A stretch of DNA of 63,928 nt, filler included, from Octopus bimaculoides (lineage: Eukaryota), in NCBI RefSeq assembly GCF_001194135.2. It is 8 parts of 8 records of this genome, joined end to end, with 100 filler letters (N's around TTAATTAATTAA, not from the genome) between each part and the next. Parts side by side here need not be neighbours in the genome. Positions count along the whole stretch, not along the records: positions 1 to 19,860 come from NC_069000.1; 7 more parts are not named here. The stretch is one strand, 5' to 3'. Positions 32 to 19,860 of this stretch are shown one piece after another. Under the pieces are notes generated by a model that did not search any database, was not told where the DNA came from, and saw only the letters and a list, made by a program, of their open reading frames with translations. The position numbers and the translations under genes are program-made. Within the stretch, counting starts at the first letter, position 1; each line of letters opens with the position of its first letter.

Positions 32-719
32 TATGCAGAGAATGCTGTATTGTGTGTACATCCCTAGAAAACACGAAGAAGATTGGAATATTGCTTTTGT
101 CCAGTCGCTCGTTCATCAGACATAATCCGGAGCCAAAATCCAGAATATTATTTACCAGTGCTAGAAATGTCCATCTCTTCAGTGATCATGGGTAACTACG
201 CTAAACAACGCTAAAATCCAAACAACAGAGCTTTTGCATCAGTTCAAGCAACTTTTAAATATTGCATCATAATCCCTTGAGAGTTTCTTTTAAGCACGCA
301 GTGGAAAAGTCCAACAACGGATTATGACGACATACATGAAAGACTGGCGTCGGGCTATTGCGTACGTCAGCAGAAAATTATGCAAGTCTATACTTCTAGC
401 ACAGAAATGTAGACCACATAATTAGTCTACTCTTGAAAAACAACAGGGATATTATCACCGTTTGTAATGTGCATGTTTTTGCCATATAAAAGCGCGAAAT
501 AAAGAAATACCCGATGCCCAGAGGGTTAGGAATGCAATTAAACCGTCAAGATGTAACAGGATATAATCGATTTGCAGGAATAATAAATGTCGATGTCACT
601 CACATCTTCATAAGAAGCTGTTCGAAAATGTCTTCGTTGTATTGCTTTACTTAAAATTCTTAACGAGAATAAATACTCTGAATTTCTATTTGTCTGATGT
701 TATTTATATTTTTTCACAG

Positions 720-771
720 AACCGTTTCATCTCCAAGAAATCTCTTGACGATAAACCTGATGACACACCAA
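720..771 (+). CDS. Internal 52-nt exon of short-chain collagen C4-like paralog A (NRFISKKSLDDKPDDTP)
   Basis: ttttcacag acceptor and gtaag donor; phase 0 to phase 1 joins the 2821 exon in frame; conserved at 7894-7945 (one synonymous, one R/H change). Confidence 0.65.
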
Positions 772-1639
772 GTAAGAACTAATTTTATATCGTACAGGAC
801 GACAACATGGAAGATATGTTCGGGAATGAGATAAAATATTTAAAAAGTAGTCAATTTTCAGTTCAACAGTGTTTAGCTGAAGTCATTTACCCGTGTCTCC
901 TTACCTTTATAATTTATAATTTCACCAACGTTGAATTGGCTCTACATCACTATTCATATTTCTTCAGGAATATATACTAAGATTAAATTTATTTAAAAAT
1001 ATATTCTACTTTACAATAATTTCCTTAATGAAATGTAACTCTATTATACTATGGCATTAATTGTGTGTATATGAGTATGTGTGCAGGGCTACGTCCCCCT
1101 CTTCATCTGCGAACCCAATGCCGAAGCTGGCGCTTCACTGTATTTATATCTACAAGTTAGCACACTGCTCAGTCTTGTGCTTTCAATCACCCGAGAATAG
1201 AGACCCGAAATAATGATGTTCCATTTTCATGCAGAGTGTATGTTAGTCATCCCTGACTTGGACCACTCAGCAACCAACACATTCAAAGCTAACAATGCTT
1301 CTACTGAAGTCCAACATTCACATTGAAAATGTTTGGCTTTTACACAAATACAAACGATTGGGCCTCCGTATAAGTATTTTACGGCAAGCAGTATTTTCCC
1401 CTTAATCTCACCTTCCTGGTAAATCATCCGCAACATGTCAAATAACCCGTAACCTTATTCCTTTTCGTGATTTACAGCGTATTCCCCTTGGAAATACTTC
1501 AATGTTTCCTCGAAGATCTACCTTTGAACGAATATCTGGTCGGGTGTACTGCGTCCAGGACAGTAATTTTGGGCGCAGGTACCCTTATAAATAACCGTAT
1601 CTTAAAACAATATTTATATCATAGAGAGTCCGTTTCCTG

Positions 1640-2030
1640 CACAGAAGGCTAGCATGGCCGCCCCATTAAGTTCAGTGACGACATTCCGCCTAATCAATCC
1701 TTCTTACGGTTATCAATAGCAAGGTGTGCACTCAAGTCTCCTTGCAGGACAAATGACTTTACCCCAGATATATTTAAATCTGAGGTGACTTCGTTAAGGA
1801 AGGTGTTGTATGTGTCCTCGCTTTTTGTTGCATTTACGTGCTGCAGTCACAGCGGTCCTTCATTCAACCTTAGCTTCAAGAGTTTGATCCTCACACCTAG
1901 TGGTATTCACTCCATAATACAATCCGAAAGCCGGGGATTGAGAGTGTCCTAATCCCAACTGTACAGACATTGTTGGCACCACACTTGCGTAGTGGAGTTT
2001 CAAGCCTATATCCAAGTGTACGCTATCGGA
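1640..2030 (-). mobile_element. Degenerate LINE remnant (possible APE endonuclease fragment) in intron of paralog A
   Basis: Minus-strand translation has many stops but includes QGDLSAHL, resembling the GDFNAH motif of APE endonucleases; weak. Confidence 0.3.
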
Positions 2031-2820
2031 ACAACGAAATTTTGTAGAGGAGACACCGATTATATCTAACTAGCAGATTATATCTAACAATTTTGACATT
2101 TTAATTCTCAATTATTAACGGTTATTCTCTTCTTGACCTGCTTTGGGCTGCTGGGACCGCAAATTTTGTACTCCCTCCCCAAACATCCCAAATTACATTG
2201 CAGATTTCTTGCTGGTTGCACCAGCATTGGGTGTGGTGAGTAATATATTTATTGAATGGGTTCCTCTACTCAAGATCCGGATGCGATACCTTTTAACTCA
2301 CTCGACAGATGATGCGGTATGGTTGTTCTTTCGAATCTTTTTCATATTGTAGTTATGATGGCCTTATTTGCGCCAAGCACCAAGCTGATATTTATAACTG
2401 ATCGATGTATATTCGCATCAGGTGCCAAGAATTGATAATATTGAATACATATCTATTAAAAAAGAATTTTGACATTATTCTTTTGAGAAATATATATGTT
2501 CACATCCAGCTTAACGTACATAAATACATCCATTCATAGGGGAGACAAATACACATTCTGATATGCTGAGATTAATCTCCGAAATCTTTGACATCAACGT
2601 CAACAGTAGGCTCAATAGACACATAACTTTGTTCTTCCTTTATAATTTATTCTTATCTTTTACATCTGTCATTCTGACTTTCATTCATTCACTCTTTCTT
2701 TCTCTCTTAAATTCTATATTTCTCTCTTCTCTATCAATTCCTTCCCATCCAACAACCTGCTTTCTTGATGATTCACTAATTCTTTCTTTCAAACTACATT
2801 GTTTCATTTAAATTTCACAG

Positions 2821-2895
2821 GACCAGGTGTTGGATCACTGTATACCCGGTGGGGCAGAACAACTTGTCCTCCTCATTCAAAACTTGTATATGAAG
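2821..2895 (+). CDS. 75-nt exon of short-chain collagen C4-like paralog A (PGVGSLYTRWGRTTCPPHSKLVYEG)
   Basis: tttcacag acceptor, gttagt donor, phase 1/1; encodes the family's Y-x-RWGR-x-x-CP...LVY-x-G N-terminal motif. Confidence 0.9.
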
Positions 2896-4434
2896 GTTAG
2901 TATACTCTGTAATTCTGTCCTCTCTCTCTCTCTTCTTTTTCTGTTTCTCCTATTCTCTCTTTGTGTCGTCTCCTTTCTCTCTCTACCTCTCTCTCACGCA
3001 CACACACTCACTCTTTTCCGGGTTGTCTGATATAAACATACACAAACCATCTTATGATATATTACGTTTCAAACGATACCTATAGATTCCATAGAGACTA
3101 CACAAGACTGCTTACTTCTTTGTAGGTATTTGGTCAAAACAGAATTTTATATGTTGTCTATTAAGGACCAGGTGAAAAGGATGTTGTCTAACCTCAGAAT
3201 ATAGATATCTGTAAGTTAAATTACAAATAGGGGATAGACTGAAGTCCAGTGTAGCGAACAAGAATTCCAGGCTGGCTAGCTATGGATTGTAGATATCAAA
3301 TGCTGAGTCTGTTAACTGTTGTTATCAACTGAAGTGGTTACAAGCGGTGAGATTGTACGTGAGTGACCACAGGTGAAGGCTGACAGCTTGAGTAACATTA
3401 ACTAGAATGTCCAATGAGTGTAATCATGGCCCAAATTGAACACGGTCTATTGGAATTGATGACAATGACTGTAAATGTTTAATGAAATGAACACAAAATG
3501 TATAATGTGGACTGGACAAGCCACATACTGTAACTAATGGGAAAAACTGATTGAGGGCTGTATTTATTAAGTAAAATATAGAGAGACTAAGTATTACTGA
3601 GAGAACACAACTGAGTACAGAGTGCACTTCTATTCTTCTCCGCCTCAGCGAAATCGTCCTATACCTCAAATCTTTCTCTTTTCGTGCACCACCTCACCTC
3701 ATTAATTGTCCAGTTTATCTTTGTAAAGTAATTCTGACATTTCCAATTCAAAGCAGCTGCTTACCACCTTTTCTCTAATCAACCTCACATCCTTTGAAAA
3801 TACTCTTAATCTGTTCTCTATAAACCCTACGCATATTATTTATCGGTCGCCGACTCAGCTGTCCATTCATCTTAAGCAATATGTCCTCACTGAACTTCAC
3901 AATTCTCCACCCCCACCTCGTTCATGTATTGCATGAAATAAAGTCTGTGTGATCAAAATGAGTATGTACGCCTGACTGGTCCGAGACTAACCGATAGGTT
4001 TAGCCACCCACACGCGTTTGGTCGACTCAACANNNNNNNNNNNNNNNNNNNNNNNNNNNNNNNNNNNNNNNNNNNNNNNNNNNNNNNNNNNNNNNNNNNN
4101 NNNNNNNNNNNNNNNNNNNNNNNNNNNNNNNNCTAACATCACACACAAACGTCTACCCCATGCAATACACATCACAACCACATATACCTACCTGTATACA
4201 CACAACATATATACATGAAGAGAAGACAAACGCACAGCTGCGAACTCATGCATACTCTCATACAGCAACACTCAGCTTACACTCACATAAACACTAACAC
4301 ATACACCACAATTCGTTCACGAGTGAGGATAAGATAACTTCTTTTAAGTGTCTACCTGTAATCAATGCTTCTGTTATTTCATATATAACTTTACTTTATA
4401 TCTTATTTACTTGATATATACTTATCTATTCTAG

Positions 4435-4934
4435 GTGTGGCTAGTGGAGAATGGTGGGACCACTCAGGTGGCGGAAGTAATCTCTTATGTCTACCTAACG
4501 ATCCGATTTGGGCCAATTATACTACAAAAGTTGAAGAAGGAGGTTTGATTTATGGCAGTGAATATCAACTTCAAAATTACGACACTAATAAACTCTTTTC
4601 TTTTGCTAACGCTAAATCACTTAATAATCACAACATTCCGTGTGCTGTCTGTTTGACACGACAACCTGCTGTTGTTATGATGTTACCAGCCAGGACACAG
4701 TGTTACCCTGGTTGGACAACTGAGTATTCAGGATATTTGATGACCAATTATCACGGATATAAGGGCAGACAAGAATATGTCTGTGTGGACTATGCACCAG
4801 AAGCTGATCCAGCCGGTTACAGAAACGAAGATGGAGCTTTATTACATTTCGTTCAGGCTGTTTGTGGTTCATTGCCATGTCCACCGTATGTCAATGGTCA
4901 AGAATTAACCTGCGTTGTGTGCAGTAAATATTGA
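4435..4934 (+). CDS. Terminal coding exon, spongin short-chain collagen/NC1-related ('short-chain collagen C4'-like) domain protein, paralog A
   Basis: ctag acceptor; motifs GGGSNLLCLP, PCAVC, PARTQCYPGW, EYSGYLM, YVCVD, CGSLPCPPY, LTCVVCS; stop TGA at 4932-4934. Confidence 0.92.
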
Positions 4935-4978
4935 ATAGAAATTAAATTCATTTCCATATGAAAATATGTGTGAAGTAC

Positions 4979-4984
4979 AATAAA
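4979..4984 (+). terminator. Candidate poly(A) signal of paralog A
   Basis: AATAAA 44 nt after the stop codon; also present in the inverted paralog C flank. Confidence 0.45.
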
Positions 4985-5500
4985 TAATATAAAATTTTAA
5001 TTGTGTTACCTAATATTTTCCTTAAAATACGTCTATCGTTAAAATAAAACGTACTAGTATTCAGAAAGAATTCGTTTAACAGTATTTTCTGTTCTGTCTC
5101 ATAATTCAACAAACCACCAAATAAAGCACCACCATATAAGTATATCAGCTTTTTTTTTTTTCACAGCCTTAGAAAATCTTATACTTGACGCTACTGGGTT
5201 TTTAGATTACAACTCGGATTCTGACAAGGACCATGAACCACCACATTACGTAGCACAGAAAATACACGGTCGCTTCAACAACAACCAGTTACTTTGACAC
5301 ATACCATTCTATTTGCCATTGATAATCAGCAAAGCCTTCCGCTCCGTTCCTACCTCTCATCTATTTAAGTTATTTATCATCACCTTTAGAAATATCACAA
5401 AATGTTCTAAGGATCTGAGACTGGAATTTACATGAACTATCTTTCAAAAAGCAGGATAACTAAGTATTGGTTCTCCCAACCTGTATCTATATACCCTTAC

Positions 5501-6360
5501 CAGTGGTGTAGCTAGGGTAAATGACGCCCACGGCAAAGCCAAAATTTGTGCCCCCNNNNNNNNNNATTTCCAAACCTAACCCATCCAACCCATTTTAAAG
5601 AGAAAACGAAACAGTTATTTAGCCAGAAAATATTCATAAAATTTATTTATTCAGAAAGTAGACATTGACTATTTTAAAGGAGTCTCTTCTAGCTTTCTTC
5701 GACGCGAAGTTGTCAATGATACAATCGAAAGTGGTGTTCTTCACGTCTTCTCGCTCGATGCTCAGCAACGCGATGTCACGGAGTCTTCCTTGTGTCACAG
5801 CAGCTCGCAGGAAGGATGTGATCAGGTTCAGCCTTCTGAAGGATCTCTCGCAACCAGCAATGGAAACAGCTCCTGTCAGCAGAATTTGTATCGCGACACG
5901 AAGATTAGGGAACACACTCTCATCTCCATATTGGACGATAAATTGGAGAAGCTCCTCAGGATTTGATATTTGGAAGTGTTCGCGACCTGCAAGTAGCATT
6001 CTGCAATCGAGGATTTCTTCGAAAAGTTCGGTTGCATCAATATCATTGCTGTAGACATTTCCAAAGGTATTGCAATGTGTCTGGAAATCGATCCACAAAA
6101 CTGCCATTACGCAGAAACTGGACATCGATAAGGAAGCCAAATTTGGCGTCAAGATCGTGCGGCCGGGAAAACCTCGCGTTCATTTCTTTAAGAAGACGGT
6201 CAATGGCCCCATACATTGTTTTTTGCGTGTTATTTTTTGTTGTCAGCTCAGCGTTGATGGAAACATCGTGAATTACACATTGAGATCTTGGACATGGCTT
6301 GACGTCAACTTGCCACCTTCTGCAAATGCTCAGTCTTTTTTCGAGTGAATCAGCCACGAA
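5501..6360 (-). mobile_element. Truncated hAT DNA transposon (transposase C-terminal dimerization domain, ZMYM1-like) with one terminus
   Basis: ORF 5643-6152 has FPNLRVAIQILLT...CERSFRRL...QGRL..IALLSIERE, typical of the hAT dimerization domain; CAGTGGTGTAGCTAGGG at 5501 resembles a hAT TIR; second end not seen. Confidence 0.8.
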
Positions 6361-6551
6361 AATTAAATAACAACATTAGTAAATAAACGTAATACATCCA
6401 GAAACTGGAATCCTTTCATTTTACACGTTTCTGTCAGTCATAAATATATTATGCTAATTATTCTGTGACAATATGAAACCACCTCTTTCCAATAATTAAA
6501 CCTGTCATATAAGTTCACACCCACTTTTACAGGTGTAGCAATCCCATTGGT

Positions 6552-6734
6552 TCATAAAGTTACGATAAGATTTATGACAGAGCCGGGTTGTTGTGCGCTC
6601 AATAAATACGTGGAATTCAGTGACAGGTCTTCACTTAGATCTCGCTCTCGATCTATTGTGGAAGCCACACGAAGTATCACGTACGACCGACAACTGTCAC
6701 CAGAATGGATTTCGCACAACTGTCCAGGAATATT
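6552..6734 (-). other. Unidentified coding-like segment X1 (NIPGQLCEIHSGDSCRSYVILRVASTIDR...); 5' part hidden in N gap; possibly pseudogenised
   Basis: 23/29 aa identical to X2 (15800-15886) with 8 synonymous versus 6 non-synonymous codon differences; 7-nt insertion and GT>CT change where X2 has its stop/GTAAGT. Confidence 0.45.
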
Positions 6735-7106
6735 NNNNNNNNNNNNNNNNNNNNNNNNNNNNNNNNNNNNNNNNNNNNNNNNNNNNNNNNNNNNNNNNNN
6801 NNNNNNNNNNNNNNNNNNNNNNNNNNNNNNNNNNNNNNNNNNNNNNNNNNNNNNNNNNNNNNNNNNNNNNNNNNNNNNNNNNNNNNNNNNNNNNNNNNNN
6901 NNNNNNNNNNNNNNNNNNNNNNNNNNNNNNNNNNNNNNNNNNNNNNNNNNNNNNNNNNNNNNNNNNNNNNNNNNNNNNNNNNNNNNNNNNNNNNNNNNNN
7001 NNNNNNNNNNNNNNNNNNNNNNNNNNNNNNNNNNNNNNNNNNNNNNNNNNNNNNNNNNNNNNNNNNNNNNNNNNNNNNNNNNNNNNNNNNNNNNNNNNNN
7101 NNNNNN

Positions 7107-7200: not shown

Positions 7201-7893
7201 TATATGTACCTTTGCAAATAGATAGATAGATAGATAGATGAAAACATATCTCGATCGACTGGCATACAATTTCGTTAGATTAAATAATGGGAAAATTCTA
7301 TAATACTTTCACATAATCACAAACAAATATTATTGTTAAACAAATGTTAAGATTTGTAGACAGTAATTAATTATAATATGCTCTTACGTGATCTGCATTG
7401 GGTTTTACTGAAAAATAGAAAGGAATGAATTGGGAAATGACTATATGCAGAACAATTGTACAATAAAAGCAATTTGAGTTATTGTTAATGACCAACAATA
7501 GATTAGGACGGCGTACATGAAAGTTTGGCGTCGAGCTATTGCGTACGTCAGCAGAAAATTATGCAGGTCTACATTTCTGTGCTAGAAATGTAGACCACGA
7601 AATTAGTCTACTCTCAACAAAACAACAGCGATATTAGCTCCGTTTATAATGTGTATGTTTTTGCTATGTAAATGCATGAAATAAAGAAATACTTGATACC
7701 CAGAGATCTAGGAATGCAAGTAAACCGCCAAGATGTAACAGGATATAATCGACTTGCTGGAATAATATATGTCGATGTCACTCACATCTTCATAAGAAGC
7801 TGTTCGAAAATGTCTTCATTGGATTTTAGATTCTAAACGAGAATAAATAATGTGAAATTTTATTTGTTTGATGCTATTTTAATTTTTTCACAG

Positions 7894-7945
7894 AACCATT
7901 TCATCTCCAAGAAATCTCTCGACGATAAACCTGATGACACACCAA
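7894..7945 (+). CDS. Internal 52-nt exon of paralog B (NHFISKKSLDDKPDDTP)
   Basis: ttttcacag acceptor and gtaag donor; homologous to 720-771. Confidence 0.65.
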
Positions 7946-9805
7946 GTAAGAACAAAAACATTAAGAAGTGTTCGGGGATGAGACTAAATATTAAAAAAGT
8001 ATTCAGGTTTCAATTCTACAGTGTTTAGCTAAAGTCATTCTCCCGTATCTCCATACCTTTATAATTTATAATTTCACCAACATCGAATTGGCTCAACATC
8101 ACTGTCCATATTTTATCAATAATATATACCAAGACACTTGCATAAATTTATTTAAAAGTATATTCTACTTAACAATAATTTCCTTAATGAAATGTAACTC
8201 TATTATACTATGGCATTAATTGTGTGTATATGAGTATGTGTGCAGGGCTACATCCCCCTCTTCATCTGAGAATCGAATGCCGAAGATGGCGCTTCAATGT
8301 GTTTATATCTACAATTTAGTAAACTTTTCAGTCTTGTGCTTCCAATCACTCGTGAATAGAGACCCGAAATAATGATGCTCCACTTTCATATAGAGTGTAT
8401 GTCATCCTGTCTTGGAGCACTCGGCAGCCAACCCATTCAATGCATGTTGGAGGCGACCCTGCGGTGAGTCAGGTCGCAACATGTCGTCTGCAAATGGCAG
8501 TCAACCGATCTCATACAGATGACCAAAGATACCTCTACCACAATGGCTGCGCATGTCCATCCAGATCATAAAAATTATGAAAAGGAGGACTAACAATGCA
8601 TACTTATATTGAAGTTCAACATCCACATTGAAAACATCTGGCTTTTACACAAATACAAATATTTGGGCCTCTGTATATGTATATTACGACAACCAGTATT
8701 ATCCCCTTAATCTCACCTTCCTGGTAAATCATCCGCAACATGTCAAATGACCCGTAATCTTATGCCTTTTCGTGGTTTACAGTGTATTCCCTTTGGAAAT
8801 ACTTCAATGTTTTCTCGAAGATCTGCCTTTGAACGAATATCTGGTCGGGTGTACTTTGACCAGTATAGTAATTTTGGGCGCGACAATTTCACTACATATC
8901 TTTTCCAGACATCTAGTATAGACTTCCCTATAATTAGAGCAAACTCTTAGGTCTCTGCTTAAAACATTTGTGATTATCATCCCTATTACTATTACCTTGG
9001 TGTCCAGAGGTCTGATCCACCTAGCATACATGGGTCACTCATAGAATACGTTATCGGAGCAGCGAAATTTTGTAGAGGAGACACCGATTATATCTAACTA
9101 TTTTGACATTTTAATTCTCAATTATTAACGGTTGTTCCCTTCTTGACCTGCTTTGGGCTCCTGGAACCGCAAAGTTTGTACTCCCTTCCCAAACATCCCA
9201 AATTACATTGCAGACTTCTTGCTGGTTGCACCGGCATTGGGTGGGGTGATCCAGATGCGATACCTTTTAACTCACTCGACAGATGATGCGGTATGGTTGT
9301 TCTTTCGAATCTTTTTCATATTGTAGTTATGATGGCCTTATTTGCGCCAAGCACAAAGCTGATATTTGTAACTGATCGATGTATATTCGCATCAGGTGCC
9401 AAGAATTGATAATATTGAATACATATCTATTAAAAAAGAATTTTGACATTATTCTTTTGAGAAATATATATGTTCACATCCAGCTTAACGTACATAAATA
9501 CATCCATTCATAGGGGAGACAAATNNNNNNNNNNNNNNNNNNNNNNNNNNNNNNNNNNNNNNNNNNNNNNNNNNNNNNNNNNNNNNNNNNNNNNNNNNNN
9601 NNNNNNNNNNNNNNNNNNNNNNNNNNNNNNNNNNNNNNNNNNTTTTACATCTGTCATTCTGACTTTCATTCATTCACTCTTTCTTTCTCTCTTAAATTCT
9701 ATATTTCTCTCTTCTCTATCAATTCCTTCCCATCCAACAACCTGCTTTCTTGATGATTCACTAATTCTTTCTTTCAAACTACATTGTTTCATTTAAATTT
9801 CACAG

Positions 9806-9880
9806 GACCAGGTGTTGGATCACTGTATACCCGGTGGGGCAGAACAACTTGTCCTCCTCATTCAAAACTTGTATATGAAG
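9806..9880 (+). CDS. 75-nt exon of paralog B (identical to 2821-2895)
   Basis: cacag acceptor, gttagt donor, YTRWGRTTCPP motif. Confidence 0.88.
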
Positions 9881-10919
9881 GTTAGTATACTCTGTAATTC
9901 TGTCCTCTCTCTCTCTCTTCTTTTTCTGTTTCTCCTATTCTCTCTTTGTGTCGTCTCCTTTCTGTCTCTACTTCTCTCTCTCTCTCTCTCTCTCACGCGC
10001 GCACGCACGCACTCACGCACGTTACGCACGCACACACACACACACATGCACACACACTCTTTTCCGGGTTGTCTGATATAAACATACACAAACCATCTTA
10101 TGATATATTACGTTTCAAACGATACCTATAGATTCCATAGAGACTACACAAGACTCCTTACTCCTTTCTAGGTGTTTAGTCAAAACAAAAATAAAAAATA
10201 AGAAATAAGTGGAAATTTTACCGGTGAGTGTGTTAAATTTTAAGGCACAATAAGAAAATGACTCTCCCCAGACACAACAGAATATGCTTCAACACACGAA
10301 ATCACATAAAAAATCTTGCAAACCAAATCCCAAAACGAAAGAATTTTAAATGTTGTCTAGTATTGACCATGTGAAAAGGATGTCGTGTAACGTGCACGTG
10401 AACATAACCACAGAGTATAGATATCTGTAAGTTAAATTACAGATAGGGGCTAGACTGAAATCCAGTATAGCGATCAAGAATTCCAGGTTGACAAGCTATG
10501 GATTGTAGATGTCAAATGTTGAGTCTGCTAACTGGTTATTAATTGTACTGGCTACGGATAATGGAATTGTACGTGAGTGACCACAGGTGAAAAGTGGCAG
10601 CTTGAGTGACAATAACTAATGTGCAAAATGATTGTAGTCATGGTCTATTGGAATTGATGACAGTGACTGTAAATGGTTAATGAAATGAACGCACAATGTA
10701 CAATGTGGACTGGACAAACCACATACTGTAACTAACGGAAAAAGCTAACTGAAGGCTGTATTTATTGAGACAAATATTGTGAGACTAAGTATTACTGAGA
10801 GAACACAACTGAATACACAGTGCACTGCAATTCTTCTCCGCCTCACCGAATTCGTCCTATACCTCAAATCTGTCTCTTTTCATGCACCACCTAACCTCAT
10901 TAATTGTCCAGTATATCTT

Positions 10920-11650
10920 TGTAAGGTAACGCCGACACTTCCAATTCAAAGCTACTGCTTCCCATCTCTTCTCCAACCAACTTCACATCCTTTGAAAATG
11001 TTGTGAATCTGTTGTCTATAAACCCTACGCATATTATTTATCGGTCGCCGACTCCGCTGTCCATTCATCTTCAAGAATATGTCCTCACTGAAAATCACAA
11101 GATTACCCTCCCCACCCCACACTGTTCATATATTGCATGAAATAAAGTCTGTGTGATCAAAAAGAGTATGTAGGTCTGACTGGTCTGAGACTAACCGATA
11201 GGTTTAGCCACCCACACGCGTTTGGTCGACTCAACANNNNNNNNNNNNNNNNNNNNNNNNNNNNNNNNNNNNNNNNNNNNNNNNNNNNNNNNNNNNNNNN
11301 NNNNNNNNNNNNNNNNNNNNNNNNNNNNNNNNNNNNAAGGTAACGCCGACACTTCCAATTCAAAGCTACTGCTTTACATCTCTTCTTCAACCACCCTCAC
11401 ATCCTTTGAAAATGTTATGAATCAGCTCTCTATAAACCCCACACATATCCTTTATCGCTTGCCAAATCTGTTGTCCATTCATGTTAAGCACTACGCCATC
11501 AATGAACTTCACAATTCACCCTCCTCACCCCCACCCAGTTCATCTATTGCATGAAATAAAATCTGTGTGATTATAACAACTATGTAGGCCCGACTCGTCC
11601 TAGACTAACCGATAGATTTAGCCACCCACACCCGTATGATCGACTAAACA
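10920..11650 (+). repeat. Intronic tandem duplication (~320 bp unit, two copies) in paralog B
   Basis: aaggtaacgccgacacttccaattcaaagctactgctt starts both 10923 and 11337; both copies run to the ...tttagccacccacac...cgact motif; single copy visible in A (3715-4032, followed by a gap). Confidence 0.7.
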
Positions 11651-11938
11651 ATAATTCATCACCTCTTACTCACAAATTCTCTGCATCTCGCCGTCTTTCG
11701 TATTCTTCTACTCACACCACCTACAATTTCTATCACCAACAATTTTTCCATTCAAGCGCGAACGACATCTTTTCCATTTCGGGAAAACACGACTACATGC
11801 GTTACAAAATCCCTTTCCTTTTTCTGTCTACTGATATCCACGCAGAAACATCTACCCCATGCAATACATATCACAACCACAAATACCTACCGTATACAGA
11901 CACACACACACACACACACACACACGTATATATATATG

Positions 11939-12354
11939 TATACATAATTAAAATTAGGGTTCAGAAAAATCTGCTTCACCACACACCAAAATTAGAAATA
12001 GTAGTTAAAACTACTATTATACTACCATAATATATCTCTCAGACAGTAGCACTCGCAACTCACACAAGCAAAAAGAAAAAAATCTATCCGGCTTTGATTA
12101 ACTGTATACGCGTTTCAGGATTAAAGAGGATATAAGATCGGGTAATATAATTTACACCTCTTTAACCCCGAAACGCGTATAAAGTTAACCAAAGCCGGGT
12201 AGATTCGTTATTTTTTCTTTTTGCTTGTGTGAGTTGCGAGTGCTACTGTCTGAGAGATATATTATGGTAGTATAATAGTAGTTTTAGCTACTATTTCTAA
12301 TTTTGGTGTGTGGTGAAGCAATTTTTTCTGAACCCTAATTTTAATTATGTTTAT
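11939..12354. mobile_element. Foldback/MITE-like element, ~190 bp inverted arms, inserted in a TA run
   Basis: 11939-12130 is a near-perfect reverse complement of 12157-12354; absent from the equivalent site of paralog A (~4200-4215). Confidence 0.85.
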
Positions 12355-12703
12355 AATCATAAAACTTTTGTATAAGTTTACCGATAATGTTTTTTAACAC
12401 ACCGAACTACTTGGTAAACTTACTAATTATTAATTAATTATTAATTTTTACCCTATATCTGTAAGAATATATATATGAAGAGTAGACAAACGCACAGCTG
12501 CGAACACATGCGCACTCTTCCACTCACATGCACACACATGCACAGCTTCCACTCACATGAAGACTAACATATACACCGCAATTCGTTCACACATGAGTAA
12601 ACACGACTTCTTTTAAGTGTCAAATTGTAATCAATGTTTCCGGTATTTCATGTATAACTTTGCTTAATATCTTTTTTCCTTGATTTATTCTTACCAATTC
12701 TAG

Positions 12704-13203
12704 GTGTGGTTGGTGGAGGATGCTATGACCACACAGGTGGCGGAAGTAATCTTTTATGTCTACCTAACGATCCCATTTGGGCCAATTATACTACAAAAGT
12801 TGAAGAAGGAGGTTTGATTTATGGCAGTGAATATCAACTTCAAAATTACGACACTAATAAACTCTTTTCTTTTGCTAACGCTAAATCACTTCATAATCAC
12901 AACGTTCCGTGTGCTGTCTGTTTGACACGCCAGCCTGCTGTTGTTATGATATTACCAGCCAGGACAGAGTGTTATCCTGGTTGGTCAACTGAGTATTCAG
13001 GATATTTGATGTCCGGTCATCACGGAGAAAAGGGCAGACAAGAATATGTGTGCGTGGACTATGCACCAGAAGCTGATCCAGCCGGTTACAGAAACGAAAA
13101 TGGAGCTGTATTCTATTTCGTTCAGGCTGCTTGTGGTTCATTGCCATGTCCACCGTATGTCGATGGTCAAGAATTAACCTGCGTTGTGTGCAGTAAATAT
13201 TGA
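12704..13203 (+). CDS. Terminal coding exon, short-chain collagen C4-like paralog B
   Basis: attctag acceptor; 500 nt like A; same Cys framework plus one extra Cys (GGGCYDH); stop TGA at 13201-13203. Confidence 0.92.
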
Positions 13204-14372
13204 ATAGAAATTAAATTCGTTTCCATATGAAATTATATCGGTGAATTACAGGAAATAATATAAATTTTTGTGTTACCTAATATTTTCTTTAAATTATATC
13301 TATCATTAAATAAACAGGTGCATTAGTTTTCAGAAAATATTGAAGACTATACAAAAGAGGCGACATAGAATGCCAGAAATATCCTCAGAAAAAATCTAAA
13401 TCAGTCGAATAATTCTAATAAACACGTTGTAAGATTTCAGCTTACCAAATTTAACGTTGAAATAAAATGTTATTTCGTTTAACAGTATTTCGTTTTCTGT
13501 CTCATGATTCAGCAAAGCCCCAAATGAAGTACCACCATAGAATTATATCATCTTTTCCTGCACAGCCTTAGAAAGTCTAATACTTGACGCTACTATCTCA
13601 GACATCTTGGTTTTCAGATTACAACTCGTATTCTGACAAGGACCATGAACCACCACATTACTTAGTACATAACATGCCTGATTCTTTCAACAACAACCAG
13701 TTACTTCTACGCAAACCATTCATTCTATTTGCCGTTATTAATCAGGAAAGCTTTCCGTTCCATTCCTACCTTATATCTTATAAAACATATTTATCATCTA
13801 CTTAAATATCACAAAATCTTTATTCTAAGATTTCTGAATCTGTGGAGTTTAGATGATCAATCCTTCAAAAGGCAGTAGAAATAAGTATTGGTCCTCCCAA
13901 CCCAAATCTATATCACAACCTTCCCACCTCTCCACAAAATAAAACACAAATGAAATTCGATGCACAGAACACTCACATCATACAATAAACGAATGGTTCG
14001 GCTAACAACATCACGTTGCAATAAACATTGAAGATTACTTAGTGTTTACAATCCGCTGTAATTATTGTGATGGGCAAATCCGGATTCACTTCTCTTGATT
14101 ACGAATATTTTCCTAAGTGTAAATTCAAAACAAATTCTGAAAATATGGACGCTGGTAGATCTTCAAATTTTTCTTTTAATTCAGTAGTTAATGATGCCTC
14201 ATAATTAGATGGTTAAAACAACCGACATGTGTTTAAGCTGTACAGAGCATGCGCAGCTGCATATGCAACCCATCATTACAAAAGGAAAGTGATGGGGCTA
14301 TGATGAAATTTGATATGGTTGTAAGATTTATTTTGTAGCTTATTTCAAATTAACGTTAGTTCGAGGGCGAAA

Positions 14373-14535
14373 TTGAGAATATGTGGCCTGTGTGTTTTCT
14401 GTACCTTGTTTATCATTTTGTGCATGTTTTTTTGCAACGTCATGTACCCAGATATGCATCTATATATACATGTAGATGAAGGTATGTACATACATGTACA
14501 TATATATGCATATACTCATATATTATTTATATATA
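14373..14535 (+). repeat. Fragment of interspersed repeat family also at 26560-27000 (+) and 52290-52680 (-)
   Basis: Shared gtacccagatatgca...tatatgcatatactcat block. Confidence 0.65.
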
Positions 14536-15793
14536 NNNNNNNNNNNNNNNNNNNNNNNNNNNNNNNNNNNNNNNNNNNNNNNNNNNNNNNNNNNNNNNNN
14601 NNNNNNNNNNNNNNNNNNNNNNNNNNNNNNNNNNNNNNNNNNNNNNNNNNNNNNNNNNNNNNNNNNNNGTGTAAAGATGTATTTATTTACACATAGGTTT
14701 ATTTAAATATTCATATATGAGTGTACTTGTGAATAAGTATGGGAGCATATTTGTGTAGATGTATTTTTTATATATAAAAAAATGCATGTCCATATTTAGA
14801 TGTATGTGTGTGTGTAAATATACATGTGTGTATATGATTGTGTATACAAGTTTATGTAGATGATAAAAAAATAATAATAACAATAATCTCAGATAATCAG
14901 TATTTGGTTGGGTATCCAAAATTACTTAATACAGCTGTGAAACATAGAATTGTACGTGTGCATGATGGTGTGTGTACTGGATTAAACAAAGCGTGTGACG
15001 GGTTGTACGTGTAGATGATAAATATGTTTTATAAGGTGGTGCCCCAGAATAGCCGCAGTCAAATGTGTCAGTCAGGTATAAGAATAAAAGAAAAGAATTG
15101 AATATATATATATATATANNNNNNNNNNNNNNNNNNNNNNNNNNNNNNNNNNNNNNNNNNNNNNNNNNNNNNNNNNNNNNNNNNNNNNNNNNNNNNNNNN
15201 NNNNNNNNNNNNNNNNNNNNNNNNNNNNNNNNNNNNNNNNNNNNNNNNNNNNTGTGTGTGTGTGTGCATGTGTGTGTGTGCGTGAGAGAGAGAGAGAGAG
15301 AGAGAGTAGGGATGGTCATAAACATTCGCAGTATACAAGAAATTTTCATTAACAGTAAGTAAATTTATTATCTCGAATGAAACTTAATACGAAGATGTTA
15401 CGAACGAACTTAGAATAACATTGGATTGCAATAAGTTAAATATTATGTAGAAAGTACTTCCCTCAATGAATATGAAAACTGCTTCGTAGACAGGTTTCCA
15501 CAAAAAACAAATAAAAAGATAAAAACATTCGGATATAAATTATAATTCTCCTTCAAACTGGAATTTTTGTCCCATTTTACAAGTTTATGCCAACGTCATC
15601 AAAATATTTTCCGAATTATTGTGCGATAATATCAGAGAATTTCTAACCAATAATTAGATCTGTCCAATAAGCTCACACCCACATTTTCAGTTCTGGCAAT
15701 CTCATTGGTTCATAAACTTATGATACGATAGGCGGCAGAGAGGAGTTATTGTGCGTTCGGTAAATAAATAGGTTGAAAGCCTCAGCTCAGAAC

Positions 15794-15976
15794 TTACATT
15801 CGAGGAATTGTTGAACCAAAGCGCAATATCACGTACCGACGACAACTATCACCATAATGGATTTGGCACAGCTGACCAGGAATATTTCGCAGCGTTATTC
15901 CATCTCTTCGATCATAACAGCGAAATACCAAAACGTATGCGGGCAAGACAGTGAAAATTACATAAATATAAATCAT
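15794..15976 (-). CDS. Unidentified small ORF/exon X2 (MIYIYVIFTVLPAYVLVFRCYDRRDGITLRNIPGQLCQIHYGDSCRRYVILRFGSTIPRM)
   Basis: Open frame conserved with X1 and synonymous-biased. Ends at TAA overlapping a perfect GTAAGT donor, so it may be an internal exon. The true start is uncertain. Confidence 0.5.
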   Translation of the reverse strand: MIYIYVIFTVLPAYVLVFRCYDRRDGITLRNIPGQLCQIHYGDSCRRYVILRFGSTIPRM

Positions 15977-16166
15977 CCGTGAACTATAGTTTCGAAATTA
16001 ATATTCTCTTACCGAAAATATCTGTTTCTTGTCAGCACGAACTGTAAGGTAAATATAATTTTCAGAATCTCATACAAGTTGTTCCCCACTGGTGGTGAAC
16101 GCGCATGTGGTTCTGATAATTACATTTAATTGTAAAATTAATATACATACATACATACCTATATAT

Positions 16167-16553
16167 ATATTAATAGTTATCACTAAGCTAACGTGGCTTT
16201 CCAGGAAAATAGGACGAATGCTGCCGTTGATTAGCTCCAAGAGACCTTCGCTTCTAGCTAGCTATGTGACACACGAACTTGCGTCCATTATAACCTTCGA
16301 ACAGACGGTCAGCAACGACGCCTGGTAGGTTCGGTTACTCCAAATTGATAAAGGGCAACCACCCCGAAACTAGTCTGTGGATGTCAGACCATCAAGGGGA
16401 AGCTGCTGACCTCTCCTGTTCGAAGGTTATGATGGACACAGGTTCGTGTGTCACATAGCTAGATAGAGGCGATGGCATCTTGGAGCTAATCAACGGCAGC
16501 ATTTATCCTATTTTTCTGGACTGCCATGTTAGCTTGGCGATTATTATTAATAT
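16167..16553. mobile_element. MITE-like element with ~145 bp terminal inverted repeats
   Basis: 16167-16315 is the reverse complement of 16404-16553 with scattered mismatches; AT/TTAA-rich ends; no coding capacity. Confidence 0.85.
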
Positions 16554-16669
16554 CCAGTACCGCTGCCGTAGCCTCCTTTAGAGAGATTTAGAAATGTTTA
16601 TATATATATATATATAAAACACTAGCAATTTCGTCTTGGAACTAAGGTTAATTTGAGGTAAACTACAAA

Positions 16670-18960
16670 ATAAATCTTGAGGCCATGTCAGATTTCAGTA
16701 TAGCCCCGTCACTTTCCTTTTGTAATGATGGGTTGCATATGCAGCTGCGCATGCTCTGTACAGCTGAAACACATGTCGGTCATTTTAACCATCTAATTAT
16801 GTTGCATCACTAACTAGTGAACTAAAAGGAAAATTTGAAGATTTAACAGCGTCCGTATTTTCTGCAATTGTTTAGAATTTACATTCAGGAAAATATTCAT
16901 AATCCAGAGAAGCGAATGTGGATTTACCCATCAGAATGATTACTATGTGATGTTATCCGAACCCTTATTTTCGTTTATCTGAGAAGTATATTCTTCACAC
17001 TCCAACATACGATCATGAATGCTATTCCGTATAACGTGACAGTCACAACATCCCAACCTTCTTTCGAACAGTATCTGTGCTTGCCCTGACTATATTTGCT
17101 CTCTTTGCTCTGACTTTTATGTGTGTTGTAATCGTTTTACATGAACTGTATTTAATCTTCTGGGATTTATCCTTTCTTCGAATCTGATATGTTTATGCAG
17201 CTGAGTGAAATAAAACGTCGTATTTGATGATCTCTGCTGTTGATTTCTTTCATTTTGTGTCTTATTTTCTGGAGAGGTGGGAAGGTTGTGGTATAGATAC
17301 AGGTTGGGAGAATCAATATTTAGTTCTCTTGCCTTTTGAAAGATAGTTCGTGTAAATTCCAGTCTCAGAAATCTTACAGTGAAAATTTTGTGATATTTCT
17401 AAAGGAGATGATAAATATCTTAAATGAATGAGAGGTACGAATAGAGCGGAAAGCTTTGCTGATTATCAATGGAAAATAGAATGGTATGTGTCAAAGTAAC
17501 CGGTTGTTATTGAAACGAAGGTGTATTTTCTGTGCTACGTAATGTGGTGGTTCATGGTCTTTGTCAAAATCCGAGATGCAATTTTAAAATCCAGATGTCT
17601 AAGATTTAGATTTTTTTTTAAGGCTGTGCATGAAAAGATGATATAATTCTTTAGCAGTACTTTATTTAGTGGTTTGTTGAATTATGAGACAGAAGAGAAA
17701 ATATTGTTAAACGAAATATCATTTTATTTTAGTTTTGAATATTTTCTGAAAACAAGTATAACATTTTATTTTAACGACAGGCGTATATTAAGGAAAATAT
17801 TAGGTAACACAATTAAAATTTTATATTATTTATTGTACTTCACACATATTTTCATATGGAAGCGAATTTAATTTCTATTCAATATTTACTGCAAACAACG
17901 CAGGTTAATTCTTGACCATTGACATACGGTGGACATGGCAATGAACCACAAATAGCCTGAATGAAATACAATAAAGCTCCATTTTCGTTTCTGTAACCTG
18001 CTGGATCAGCTTCTGGTGCATGGTCCACACATACATATTCATGTCTGCCCTTATGATAATGAGCCTCTGTCATCAAATATCCTGAATATTCAGTTAACCA
18101 ACCAGGGTAACACTCAGTCCTGGCTGGTAACATCATAACAACAGCAGGTTGTCGTGTCAAACAGACAGCACACGGAACGTTGTGATCATAAAGTGATTTA
18201 GCGTTAGCAAAAGAAAAGAGTTTATTAGTTGGGTACAGGTCTATTTGATATTCACTGCCATAAATGAAACCTCCATCTTCAACTCCGGTAGTATAATTGG
18301 CCCAAATAGGGTAAACATAAGAGATTACTTCCACCACCTGTGTGTTGAAATAATTGTCCACCAGCCACACCTAGAATTGGTCAGAATAAATCAAGTNNNN
18401 NNNNNNNNNNNNNNNNNNNNNNNNNNNNNNNNNNNNNNNNNNNNNNNNNNNNNNNNNNNNNNNNNNNNNNNNNNNNNNNNNNNNNNNNNNNNNNNGTTAT
18501 CTTATCCTCACGCGTGAACGAATTGTGGTGTATGTGTTAGTGTTTATGTGAGTGTAAGCCGTGTGTTGCTGTATAAGAGTATGCATGAGTTCGCAGGTGT
18601 GTGTTTGCCTTCACTTCATAATTATATGTTGTGTGTATACGAGAAGATATTTGTGGTTGTGATGTGTATTGCNNNNNNNNNNGTAAACATAAGAGATTAC
18701 TTCCACCACCTGTGTGTTGAAATAATTGTCCACCAGCCACACCTAGAATTGGTCAGAATAAATCAAGTAAAAATGATATTAAGCAAAGTTATATATGAAA
18801 TAACGGAAACATTCATTACAAGTAGACACTTAGAAGAAGTTATCTTATCCTCACGCGTGAACGAATTGTGGTGTATGTGTTAGTGTTTATGTGAGTGTAA
18901 GCCGTGTGTTGCTGTATAAGAGTATGCATGAGTTCGCAGGTGTGTGTTTGCCTTCACTTC
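16670..18960 (-). repeat. Inverted duplication of ~12480-14330 (paralog C unit)
   Basis: Reverse-complement similarity through terminal exon, upstream intron and >1 kb of 3' flank (e.g. gtacagagcatgcgcagctgcatatgcaacccatcattacaaaagg at ~14240 vs ~16715-16762). Confidence 0.9.
17879..18370 (-). pseudogene. Terminal exon of paralog C with 8-nt deletion/frameshift as assembled (pseudogene or assembly error)
   Basis: attctag acceptor at 18371-18377; 492 nt versus 500 in A/B; CCT AAC GAT CCG is reduced to CCCT near 18308-18311; remainder in frame with all Cys kept. Confidence 0.75.
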
Positions 18961-18961
18961 A
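18683..18961. other. Gap-bounded duplicate of 18311-18620 (probable assembly redundancy or haplotype)
   Basis: Identical to the non-N parts of 18311-18620 and flanked by N runs on both sides. Confidence 0.8.
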
Positions 18962-19827
18962 NNNNNNNNNNNNNNNNNNNNNNNNNNNNNNNNNNNNNNN
19001 NNNNNNNNNNNNNNNNNNNNNNNNNNNNNNNNNNNNNNNNNNNNNNNNNNNNNNNNNNNNNTGCATAAGCTATATTTATGTGTGTGTTTGTGTGTGAGTG
19101 CTTAAACTATGAGTATGTATGTATGTATTTTTGCATGTGTGAATGTTAGCATGTGTGTATGAGTGTGTGTGAGGTTGAGCATGTGCGCGCGCGTGCGTGT
19201 GTAAGCTATGTGTGTATATTGTCTGTGATCATGTGCGCGATGTATGTGTTAAAGTTAGTTTTTGTGTGAGTGTAAGGTGTGTGTTGCTGTATGAAATCGC
19301 GTATATAAGTTCGAAGTTCTGCGTGGACATAGTTTTAATATATATGCATATGTGGTATGTTTACGGGTAGGTATTTGTGGTTTTGAAGTGAATTATGATG
19401 GATTTTGATGTCTGTGTGCGGGTGTCACTAGTTTGAGAAAGGAAGGAGTTTGTGCAAAGCCTGTAGCTGTGTTTTCCGAAATGGAAAATATGTTGTTTAT
19501 ATGTGGTGTTTACTCCACGTTGAACACTCTGTGTTTATTTCAGTCTCTATTTACGACCTGTTGTCACTGTAATGAACGTTTACCATTTAGTTTAGCCAGC
19601 ATTTGCTGTCATTGCGTTTTTTAACAATGTGATGCACTATAAGCGAATACGCGTGTCTACGAAACAGAAGGAGAGGATGGGAAAGCGTGATAAAGAGAGT
19701 TTGTGAGAAAGAGTATGACCGTCAATGTGTGTGAGAAAGAAAGAGAGACAGAGAGTGAGGAAGAGAAAGAGAGAGAAAGAAAGAGAGGAAAAAGGTGAAA
19801 GGGAATAGAAGTAGGGAATCTACTAAC

Positions 19828-19860
19828 CATCATACACAATACCTGACGAAGGTGGACAGC
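19828..19860 (-). CDS. 3' part of the penultimate exon of paralog C (SCPPSSGIVYDG), truncated by gap
   Basis: Minus strand reads gc tgt cca cct tcg tca ggt att gtg tat gat g|gttagt; homologous to TCPPHSKLVYEG|gttagt, same phase-1 donor. Confidence 0.8.

What the first reader, a model, noticed from the sequence alone, without database searches (positions are those of the whole stretch)
15794..16041. Unrecognised small Cys-containing gene or exon (X2) with a purifying-selection signature, interleaved with the C4-like genes
Across 29 alignable codons of X1 and X2, 15 are identical, 8 differ synonymously and 6 non-synonymously, and both Cys (C-x7-C) are kept. The same region has stops in the plus frame of X2, so the minus frame is the constrained one. 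I cannot assign the peptide to any family. Three models: (a) a 60-aa single-exon peptide with a hydrophobic N-terminus and an RR dibasic site; (b) an internal exon, with a 29-nt mini-exon at 16013-16041 (ttacag...|gtaag) spliced in frame through a weak AAG acceptor at 15906 (FVLTRNRYFRDGITLRNIPG...) and leaving by the GTAAGT donor at 15792-15797; (c) a displaced 5' exon of the C4-like genes, though its phase-2 donor does not fit the 52-nt exon directly. Co-duplication with the C4-like genes makes a linked two-gene module the best candidate here for an undescribed system.
Basis: partly seen in the sequence, partly recalled or inferred. Interest (0 to 1): 0.7.

Follow-up and report, generated by a model that had tools for sequence, protein, structure and literature searches.

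The report
C4-like gene's first exon, read backwards
The supposed new small cysteine-peptide gene is the promoter, 5' UTR and first coding exon of the neighbouring octopus "short-chain collagen C4-like" genes translated on the wrong strand, and the copy at 15794-16041 is a broken, silent relic of that exon, so the finding is ordinary.

Summary

On the + strand, X1 (ATG 6705) and X2 (ATG 15857) encode MDFAQLSRNISQRYSISS..., the N-terminus of annotated octopus short-chain collagen C4-like proteins. In O. vulgaris, O. bimaculoides and Argonauta loci the annotated gene start falls exactly on this ATG. In two O. sinensis array segments, each C4 last exon whose downstream flank is held is followed by one exon-1 copy.

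RNA contigs splice the X1 exon, and a 98%-identical X2-type paralog exon, to the 52-nt exon 2 at the predicted junction.

The minus "ORF" lies codon-on-codon antisense to this exon and runs on through the 5' UTR to about the transcription start. Its "synonymous" AGA/CGA and TTG/CTG changes are sense Ser and Gln third-position changes.

In wider comparisons the sense frame shows synonymous excess (7:2). The antisense frame does not (0-3 synonymous against 7-17 non-synonymous) and carries stops in Argonauta, in two O. sinensis copies and in the expressed paralog.

X2 keeps only 62 of exon 1's 144 nt. An unrelated repeat fragment (15919-16081) supplies the ATG, the hydrophobic N-terminus and the "mini-exon". 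Almost no reads come from X2 itself.

The parts
15794..15976 (-). It is a chance open frame made of three unrelated pieces: antisense of the 5' UTR (15794-15856), antisense of the first 62 nt of the exon-1 coding sequence (15857-15918), and a repeat fragment that supplies the ATG and the hydrophobic N-terminus (15919-15976).
15857..15918 (+). X2 coding relic: the ATG and the first 20 2/3 codons (MDLAQLTRNISQRYSISSII) of exon 1 of a short-chain collagen C4-like gene. The other 82 nt of the 144-nt exon and its donor are missing.
   Evidence: tblastn with P0007, 85% over aa 1-20. Homology to exon 1 of other species stops at exon nt 60-61. Almost no RNA reads carry the X2 letters.
15519..15856 (+). 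X2 proximal promoter and 5' UTR. It holds CCAAT (15647, 15664), CACACCC (15674), ATTGG (15704) and a TATA-like TAAATA (15761-15766). The transcription start is inferred at about 15790-15810.
   Evidence: Homology to 6367-6704. Motifs are conserved among Octopus copies. RNA coverage of the 98%-identical paralog starts here with no clipped ends. The promoter role is an inference.
15919..16081 (.). Fragment of an unrelated mid-copy interspersed repeat that truncates X2's exon 1.
   Evidence: DNA depth is about 100-180 against about 1 for single-copy flanks. Other copies of the repeat continue past 15918 with a different, mutually consistent sequence. A few reads at >=97% cover the X2 side at single-copy depth, and at least one fits the whole 101-nt stretch. 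The fragment is absent from loci L001-L005.
6705..6734 (+). X1 coding part: the ATG and first 10 codons (MDFAQLSRNI) of exon 1 of C4-like gene B. The remaining 114 nt of the exon lie in the N gap 6735-7106.
   Evidence: ORF 6705. An RNA contig of 1327 nt is exact over 5574-6734, then carries 114 nt, then exon 2. The sequence equals the N-terminus of P0007.
6367..6704 (+). X1 proximal promoter and 5' UTR of gene B, with CCAAT 6489, CACACCC 6516, ATTGG 6546 and TAAATA 6603. RNA coverage rises at about 6660.
   Evidence: It is 89-91% identical to 10 O. sinensis copies and 1 O. vulgaris copy.
7894..7945 (+). Gene B exon 2 (52 nt, NHFISKKSLDDKPDDTP), with AG at 7892-7893 and GT at 7946-7947.
9806..9880 (+). 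Gene B exon 3 (75 nt).
12704..13203 (+). Gene B exon 4, the last exon, encoding the C4-like domain.
720..4934 (+). Gene A exons 2-4 (720-771, 2821-2895, 4435-4934). Its exon 1 lies upstream of the window.
17879..19858 (-). Gene C in inverted orientation. Exon 4 is 18371-17879 and an exon-3 match lies at about 19858-19826.

Best explanation
X1 and X2 are two copies of the 5' end of short-chain collagen C4-like genes. Each holds a proximal promoter, a 5' UTR of about 45-65 nt, and the start of a 144-nt first coding exon. That exon encodes a short N-terminal tail and a hydrophobic signal-anchor (MDFAQLSRNISQRYSISSLIAFGVLLVLTIVIL...). All of this is on the + strand.

The genes have four exons (144, 52, 75 and 500 nt) and sit head to tail in an array. 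The first exon of one gene therefore lies 2-5 kb downstream of the last exon of the previous gene, which is why X looks 'interleaved' and 'co-duplicated'.

There the codons lie exactly on the sense codons, with antisense position 1 opposite sense position 3. Sense synonymous changes such as CAA/CAG and TCT/TCG then appear as antisense synonymous TTG/CTG and AGA/CGA. The sense exon also happens to lack the codons (TTA, CTA, TCA) that would read as stops backwards. The open frame runs on by chance through the 5' UTR and ends near the transcription start.

X1 is the working first exon of gene B in the window. X2 is a dead relic: it keeps the promoter, the UTR and 62 nt of coding sequence, is then cut off by a repeat fragment, faces an inverted gene copy, and gives almost no RNA.
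For: Shown:
- The + strand translation of X1 (with its RNA-derived extension) is MDFAQLSRNISQRYSISSLIA..., and of X2 is MDLAQLTRNISQRYSISSII. These match aa 1-20 of P0007, P0019, P0020, P0022 and P0026.
- In L003 (Argonauta hians), L004 (O. bimaculoides, two genes) and L005 (O. vulgaris), the recorded gene start coincides with the base that aligns to ATG 6705/15857.
- In 164 kb of the O. sinensis array, each C4 last exon whose downstream flank is held is followed after 2.7-4.9 kb by one exon-1 copy. All 14 copies in four species keep the 48-codon sense ORF.
- A 1327-nt RNA contig is window 5574-6734 exactly, then 114 nt, then exon 2.
- A 307-nt RNA contig (depth 300) starts as the X2-type sequence (3 differences over 15787-15918) and reaches exon-2 sequence at record 215 by extrapolation from the match at 225. 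That is exactly 144 nt after the ATG.
- A 161-nt contig joins an exon-1 end (GKIEEKSKT) to exons 2 and 3 of gene B exactly.
- Exon 1 ends in ...AAAACG|GTAAGT in the orthologs, and exon 2 is preceded by AG. The transcripts are therefore + strand.
- RNA coverage of the paralog fades out at about 15790-15810 with no clipped ends and no joints, as at a transcription start.
- In wider comparisons the sense frame shows 7 syn: 2 nonsyn (P 0.0002-0.0006). The antisense frame shows 0-3 syn: 7-17 nonsyn.

Inferred: the promoter motifs and the exact position of the transcription start.
Against: - In the 60 nt upstream of the ATG, where there is no sense coding, the X1-X2 pair still shows 6 synonymous to 6 non-synonymous antisense codons (P about 0.013 for one frame). 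I treat this as chance plus uneven conservation, because none of the 14 other pairwise comparisons repeats it. Those pairs are not independent of one another.
- The RNA raw-read libraries are unstranded, so strand is known only through the splice sites.
- The rest of X1's exon 1 and its donor lie in an N gap and are known only from RNA contigs, whose exon 2 differs at 3 bases from gene B's (NRF instead of NHF). That contig may therefore be a composite or come from a variant allele.
- Direct read support for the X2/repeat junction at 15918 is thin, about one read per run that fits the whole stretch.
Confidence: 0.95

Rival explanations
1. In addition to being exon 1 of the C4-like genes, the segment carries a real overlapping antisense small ORF. 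In O. sinensis and O. vulgaris this would be the 63-aa MKNHDRQNEKNPKSYERRNGITLRNIPGQLCEIHSGDSCRSYVILRVASTKDRDARFKLKTCN, translated from a divergent or antisense transcript.
For: - The antisense frame is open in 7 of 10 O. sinensis copies and in the O. vulgaris copy, with an ATG.
- The X1-X2 pair shows antisense synonymous excess even in the 5' UTR part (P about 0.013).
- The unstranded libraries cannot exclude an antisense RNA.
Against: - The frame has stops in Argonauta (3), in 2 of 10 O. sinensis copies and in the highly expressed paralog (NE*KAKS).
- It is largely rewritten in O. bimaculoides, with 0-2 synonymous against 13-17 non-synonymous codons per 60-63-nt part.
- RNA coverage stops at the sense transcription start, so the 3' part of the ORF is barely covered.
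- The word-seeded protein search collected no candidate for the 60-aa ORF, and Pfam gave no hit.
- The copies within a species are about 90% identical in DNA, so intact frames among them carry little weight.
Confidence: 0.03
2. X is a fragment of a transposon ORF, for example part of the hAT element next to X1, dispersed independently of the C4-like genes.
For: - X1 abuts a hAT transposase C-terminal fragment (5643-6230 minus; Pfam Dimer_Tnp_hAT, E = 3.6e-4). Both lie on one RNA contig.
- X has several copies in the genome: DNA depth is about 5-13 against about 1 for single-copy flanks.
Against: - None of the 14 copies in the other species has the hAT fragment beside it.
- X1/X2 homology ends at 6367, about 135 nt short of the transposase-like match (from about 6230) and 10 nt short of the upstream ORF that runs into it (6357).
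- Every copy found sits at the start of a C4-like gene and encodes its N-terminus.
- The copy number fits the size of the gene family rather than that of a dispersed repeat.
Confidence: 0.01
3. X2 is not dead. It is a live alternative promoter and first exon, spliced to something further downstream.
For: The promoter motifs, the TATA-like box and the ATG are intact in X2.
Against: - Nearly all RNA reads over 15787-15918 carry the paralog's letters. At 15904 this is 146 of 147 reads in run X22. All of them leave X2 at 15918.
- The exon's donor is gone.
- The next C4-like unit is inverted.
Confidence: 0.02

Closest known systems
Short-chain collagen C4-like genes of octopods (NCBI models such as P0007 O. 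vulgaris, P0019/P0020/P0022 O. bimaculoides, P0026 Argonauta hians)
   Same: The + strand of X encodes their N-terminus. X sits at their annotated start. It is spliced to the same 52-nt exon 2. The four-exon layout is the same (144/52/75-78/500 nt).
   Different: X2 is a truncated, unexpressed copy of exon 1 only. The window's own genes are 76-86% identical to the listed models rather than the same genes.
Shadow (antisense) ORFs of coding sequences, a known artefact of gene finding (my own knowledge, not tested against the literature here)
   Same: The frame is open on the opposite strand in exact codon-on-codon register, and its apparent synonymous changes mirror the sense third-position changes.
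   Different: Here the open frame continues about 60 nt beyond the coding part into the 5' UTR. In X2 it is also lengthened by a repeat insertion that happens to supply an ATG.
Collagen IV NC1 (C4) domain proteins
   Same: Only the name given by the sources to the last-exon domain.
   Different: Pfam gave no C4 (or any other) hit for the window's last-exon ORFs at E <= 1, and no PDB sequence matched. I do not claim membership of the collagen IV NC1 family here.

Membership tests
Exon 1 (5' UTR + start codon + signal-anchor) of short-chain collagen C4-like genes | The + strand ATG-initiated frame matches the N-terminus of annotated family members. | tested here: met
   X1 plus its RNA extension is identical to P0007 aa 1-21. 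X2 is 85% identical over aa 1-20.
Exon 1 (5' UTR + start codon + signal-anchor) of short-chain collagen C4-like genes | It lies at the annotated gene start in loci of other species. | tested here: met
   In L003, L004 (two genes) and L005 the gene start at 10001 or 23785 is the base aligned to 6705/15857.
Exon 1 (5' UTR + start codon + signal-anchor) of short-chain collagen C4-like genes | It is spliced to exon 2 in RNA at the end of the 144-nt exon. | tested here: met
   Met for X1 (1327-nt contig) and for the X2-type paralog (307-nt contig). Not met for X2 itself, which has lost the donor and gives almost no reads.
Exon 1 (5' UTR + start codon + signal-anchor) of short-chain collagen C4-like genes | The sense frame is under purifying selection across copies and species. 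| tested here: met
   All 14 copies keep 48 open codons. Sense synonymous excess reaches 7:2, P 0.0002-0.0006.
Exon 1 (5' UTR + start codon + signal-anchor) of short-chain collagen C4-like genes | One copy per gene in the tandem array. | tested here: met
   In L001 and L002, 8 of the 9 C4 last exons are followed after 2.7-4.9 kb by one copy. The ninth lies at the locus end, so its flank is not held.
   There are stops in Argonauta (3), in 2 of 10 O. sinensis copies and in the expressed paralog. The second Cys region is rewritten in O. bimaculoides.
   0-3 synonymous against 7-17 non-synonymous codons in the comparisons that span O. bimaculoides or Argonauta, P 0.04-1.0.
   No joints and no clipped ends at these sites. 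Coverage ends at about 15790-15810. Strand could not be read directly because the libraries are unstranded.
   It lies in the repeat fragment 15919-16081, which is absent from every other copy.
Transposon-derived ORF | Dispersed independently of the C4-like genes, with similarity to a transposon protein. | tested here: not met
   All 16 copies examined sit at C4-like gene starts. No Pfam hit. A whole-genome census was not possible with these tools.

The most novel reading that the evidence does not exclude
The promoter and first-exon region of the octopus C4-like genes might also encode, on the opposite strand, a lineage-restricted peptide of about 60 aa with a C-x7-C loop. It would be an overlapping antisense gene, young and confined to the O. 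vulgaris/O. sinensis group and the window's species. This would explain the antisense synonymous excess that remains in the 5' UTR part of the X1-X2 pair.
Probability: 0.02. Interest if true: 0.45.

Novelty: already known. Interest (0 to 1): 0.05.

Why it matters
There is no new system here. The value is corrective and has three parts.

- A purifying-selection signature from one pair of sequences can be the mirror image of selection on the opposite strand. The warning sign was that most differences fell on first codon positions (11/5/9).
- In a head-to-tail gene array, the 5' exon of the next gene can pass for a separate gene 'interleaved' with the family.
- The work yields a clean four-exon map of three short-chain collagen C4-like genes in the window. 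It also identifies X2 as a truncated promoter/exon-1 relic at an inversion junction, which is useful for annotating this octopus array.

Tried and rejected
- Pfam scan of the X1 and X2 minus ORFs and of the three last-exon ORFs: nothing at E <= 1.
- Word-seeded protein search with the 60-aa ORF: no candidate collected.
- Rfam scan of the whole window: nothing.
- PDB sequence search with a full C4-like protein: nothing.
- hAT-transposon origin of X: rejected, because the hAT fragment is absent beside all copies in other species.
- Exon with a GTAAGT donor at 15797: I considered this seriously after seeing RNA coverage drop there. I rejected it because no read is clipped or joined at that site, and because the drop fits the start of + strand transcripts.
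- A search for the rest of exon 1 downstream of the repeat fragment in X2 (15919-17000): only low-complexity hits.
- A wide RNA lay over 7700-13300 was swamped by microsatellite reads. It gave only the exon 2-3-4 contigs.

Full report
**1. The observation**

The 60-aa minus-strand ORF at 15794-15976 is present. It has a partial second copy, X1, at 6552-6734, which is cut by the N gap 6735-7106.

RNA contigs that run into the N gap gave 10 more X1 codons. The count is then 20/10/10 over 40 codons.

I placed the same substitutions at random sites. This gave P(syn >= observed) of about 0.0016 and P(nonsyn <= observed) of about 0.0004. None of the other five frames did as well.

Two oddities showed at once.
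- The X1/X2 similarity (72% over 378 nt) runs about 290 nt past the ORF's stop.
- The differences fall 11/5/9 on antisense codon positions 1/2/3. The 'synonymous' changes are largely the rare first-position kind, AGA/CGA and TTG/CTG.

**2. Layout of the window**

Self-comparison shows two direct units, A (311-5492) and B (7492-14375), which are 84-88% identical. A third unit, C, is inverted (19497-16626). Each unit carries a 165-aa last-exon ORF.

That ORF hits 'short-chain collagen C4-like' proteins of Octopus sinensis (84%), O. vulgaris (80%), O. bimaculoides (76%) and Argonauta, and more distantly of bivalves, Capitella and Branchiostoma. X1 follows unit A and X2 follows unit B, both in the same orientation.

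**3. Read evidence at X2**

*DNA reads laid at >=80% likeness*

| Interval | Depth | Reading |
|---|---|---|
| 15546-15627 | about 1 | single-copy level |
| 15669-15914 | about 5-13 | small family |
| 15915-16078 | about 100-180 | separate interspersed repeat that begins at 15918 |
| 16120-16500 | thousands | highly repeated element |

*RNA reads*
- Nearly all reads over 15787-15918 carry three fixed differences: 15804 G>T, 15875 A>T and 15904 C>T.
- All of them leave X2 at 15918. They come from a 98%-identical paralog elsewhere in the genome, not from X2.
- Their coverage fades at about 15790-15810 with no clipped ends and no joints. A transcript end looks like this. A splice site at the GTAAGT does not.

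**4. Related loci**

I fetched the genomic loci of five annotated C4-like proteins.

In 164 kb of the O. sinensis array there are ten X1-type copies, 89-91% identical to X1. Each C4 last exon whose downstream flank is held is followed by one copy 2.7-4.9 kb downstream.

In the O. vulgaris, O. bimaculoides (two genes) and Argonauta loci, the X match sits exactly on the recorded start of the C4-like gene. Locus position 10001 or 23785 aligns to window 6705 and 15857.

The + strand at these positions reads as follows.
- X1, with its RNA-derived extension: ATG GAT TTC GCA CAA CTG TCC AGG AAT ATT..., that is MDFAQLSRNISQRYSISSLIAFGVLLV.
- X2: MDLAQLTRNISQRYSISSII.

The proteins begin MDFAQLSRNISQRYSISSLIAFGVLLVLTIVILHQDSRIGKMEEKSKT (P0007), MDFAKLSRNISQRFSISS... 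(P0019) and MEISRISRNISQRCSIAT... (P0026).

X is therefore the first coding exon of the C4-like genes with its 5' UTR and proximal promoter.

**5. RNA proof of the join**

- A 1327-nt contig in run X17 (depth 88) is identical to window 5574-6734. It then carries 114 nt, which is exactly the rest of a 144-nt exon 1. It then continues into exon 2, 7894-7945.
- A 307-nt contig (depth 300) begins as the X2-type sequence. Its match to exon 2 starts at record 225 (window 7904). Extrapolated back, exon 2 begins at record 215, exactly 144 nt after the ATG at record 71.
- A 161-nt contig in run X25 joins an exon-1 end (GGAAAATCGAAGAGAAATCGAAAACA, GKIEEKSKT) to exons 2 and 3 of gene B with no mismatch.

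In the orthologs exon 1 ends ...AAAACG|GTAAGT. Exon 2 is preceded by AG (7892-7893) and followed by GT (7946-7947). The spliced RNAs are therefore + strand.

**6. Gene map of the window**

| Gene | Strand | Exon 1 | Exon 2 | Exon 3 | Exon 4 |
|---|---|---|---|---|---|
| A | + | upstream of the window | 720-771 | 2821-2895 | 4435-4934 |
| B | + | 6705 into the N gap | 7894-7945 | 9806-9880 | 12704-13203 |
| C | minus | outside the window | not mapped | about 19858-19826 | 18371-17879 |

X2 retains the promoter, the UTR and 62 nt of exon 1. Nothing downstream to 17000 matches the other 82 nt or the donor.

**7. Why the minus frame looked constrained**

The antisense codons lie exactly on the sense codons: 15916 is antisense position 1 and sense position 3.

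In the 20 codons that overlap the coding sequence, the sense frame has 5 synonymous changes (Gln CAA/CAG twice, Ile twice, Ser TCT/TCG) and 3 conservative replacements. Read backwards, four of the eight differing codons come out synonymous: Leu TTG/CTG twice, Arg AGA/CGA and Gly GGA/GGT.

The wider comparisons settle which strand is constrained.

| Comparison | Sense frame (syn : nonsyn) | Antisense frame (syn : nonsyn) |
|---|---|---|
| X1 vs O. bimaculoides | 7:2 (P = 0.0002) | 1:8 |
| O. sinensis vs O. bimaculoides | 7:2 (P = 0.0006) | 2:7 |
| O. bimaculoides vs Argonauta | 7:10 (P = 0.002) | 1:16 |

The antisense frame has three stops in Argonauta, a stop in 2 of 10 O. sinensis copies, and a stop four codons upstream of Tyr in the expressed paralog (NE*KAKS). 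The second-Cys region is rewritten in O. bimaculoides. All 14 sense exons in four species remain open.

**8. What is not fully explained**

In the 60 nt upstream of the ATG, the X1-X2 pair alone still shows 6 synonymous to 6 non-synonymous antisense codons (P about 0.013 for one frame, about 0.08 after allowing for six frames). No other pair shows this. I take it as chance on top of uneven conservation of the 5' UTR and core promoter.

Conserved CCAAT/ATTGG and CACACCC motifs, and a TATA-like TAAATA 96-102 nt upstream of the ATG, are visible in the alignment of Octopus copies. Their role is an inference.

**9. Comparison with what is known, and verdict**

The genes are annotated in three octopod genomes and Argonauta. 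One family member was reported among O. vulgaris ink proteins (PMC10142993).

Neither Pfam nor PDB sequence searches link the domain to collagen IV NC1. The 'C4' label is therefore the sources' name and not something I tested.

The finding is the known first exon of a known gene family read on the wrong strand. The specific copy reported is a truncated relic. Models (a) and (b) and the 'two-gene module' are not supported. Interest is low.

Noticed in passing
window 5643-6357 (minus): A C-terminal fragment of a hAT-family transposase lies between gene A and gene B's promoter. It includes AIDRLLKEMNARF... and CERSFRRLNLITSFLRAAV... (Pfam Dimer_Tnp_hAT, E = 3.6e-4) and has one frame break. It is absent from the corresponding place in O. 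sinensis, O. vulgaris and O. bimaculoides. One RNA contig (1327 nt, depth 88) runs through it into exon 1 and on to exon 2, which suggests read-through or an upstream start in that sample.
   Followed up: partly
window 16120-16560 (inverted arms 16167-16304 and 16416-16553): A pair of inverted arms, 87% complementary and 111 nt apart, belongs to a very abundant element. DNA read depth is in the thousands where single copy is about 1. There is no Rfam match and the element was not classified.
   Followed up: partly
window 15919-16081: A mid-copy repeat fragment (depth about 100-180). Other copies of it continue past 15918 with a mutually consistent sequence (...CCTAATGGTTCTCAAATGAAATT), so the copy here is truncated. 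The family was not identified.
   Followed up: partly
window 18311-18396 = 18683-18768 and 18496-18618 = 18839-18961: Two 100%-identical direct duplicates flank N gaps inside and beside gene C's last exon. They look like assembly artefacts, with gap edges duplicated, rather than biology.
   Followed up: no
window 7898 (gene B exon 2): The reference reads CAT (NHF). The most abundant RNA contigs read CGT (NRF), as in gene A's exon 2. One lower-depth contig matches the reference exactly. This could be allelic or paralog variation, or contigs that mix copies.
   Followed up: no
window 11939-12081 / 12211-12353: A 143-nt inverted repeat, 97% complementary and 129 nt apart, lies in intron 3 of gene B. 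A weak reverse-strand tblastn match to exon-2/3-like sequence lies at 12241-12167, in the spacer and one arm.
   Followed up: no
window 9944-10060 and 11896-11926: CT/CA-type microsatellites attract thousands of RNA reads and false back-joints. They swamp any wide read-laying over gene B.
   Followed up: no
P0001 (205 aa, metaclust) vs window 4437-4934: By eye, an older gene model is identical to gene A's last-exon ORF up to ...TCVVC. It then continues (TLENLILDATGF...) instead of ending in SKY*. This may be a mis-spliced model or an alternative 3' end.
   Followed up: no
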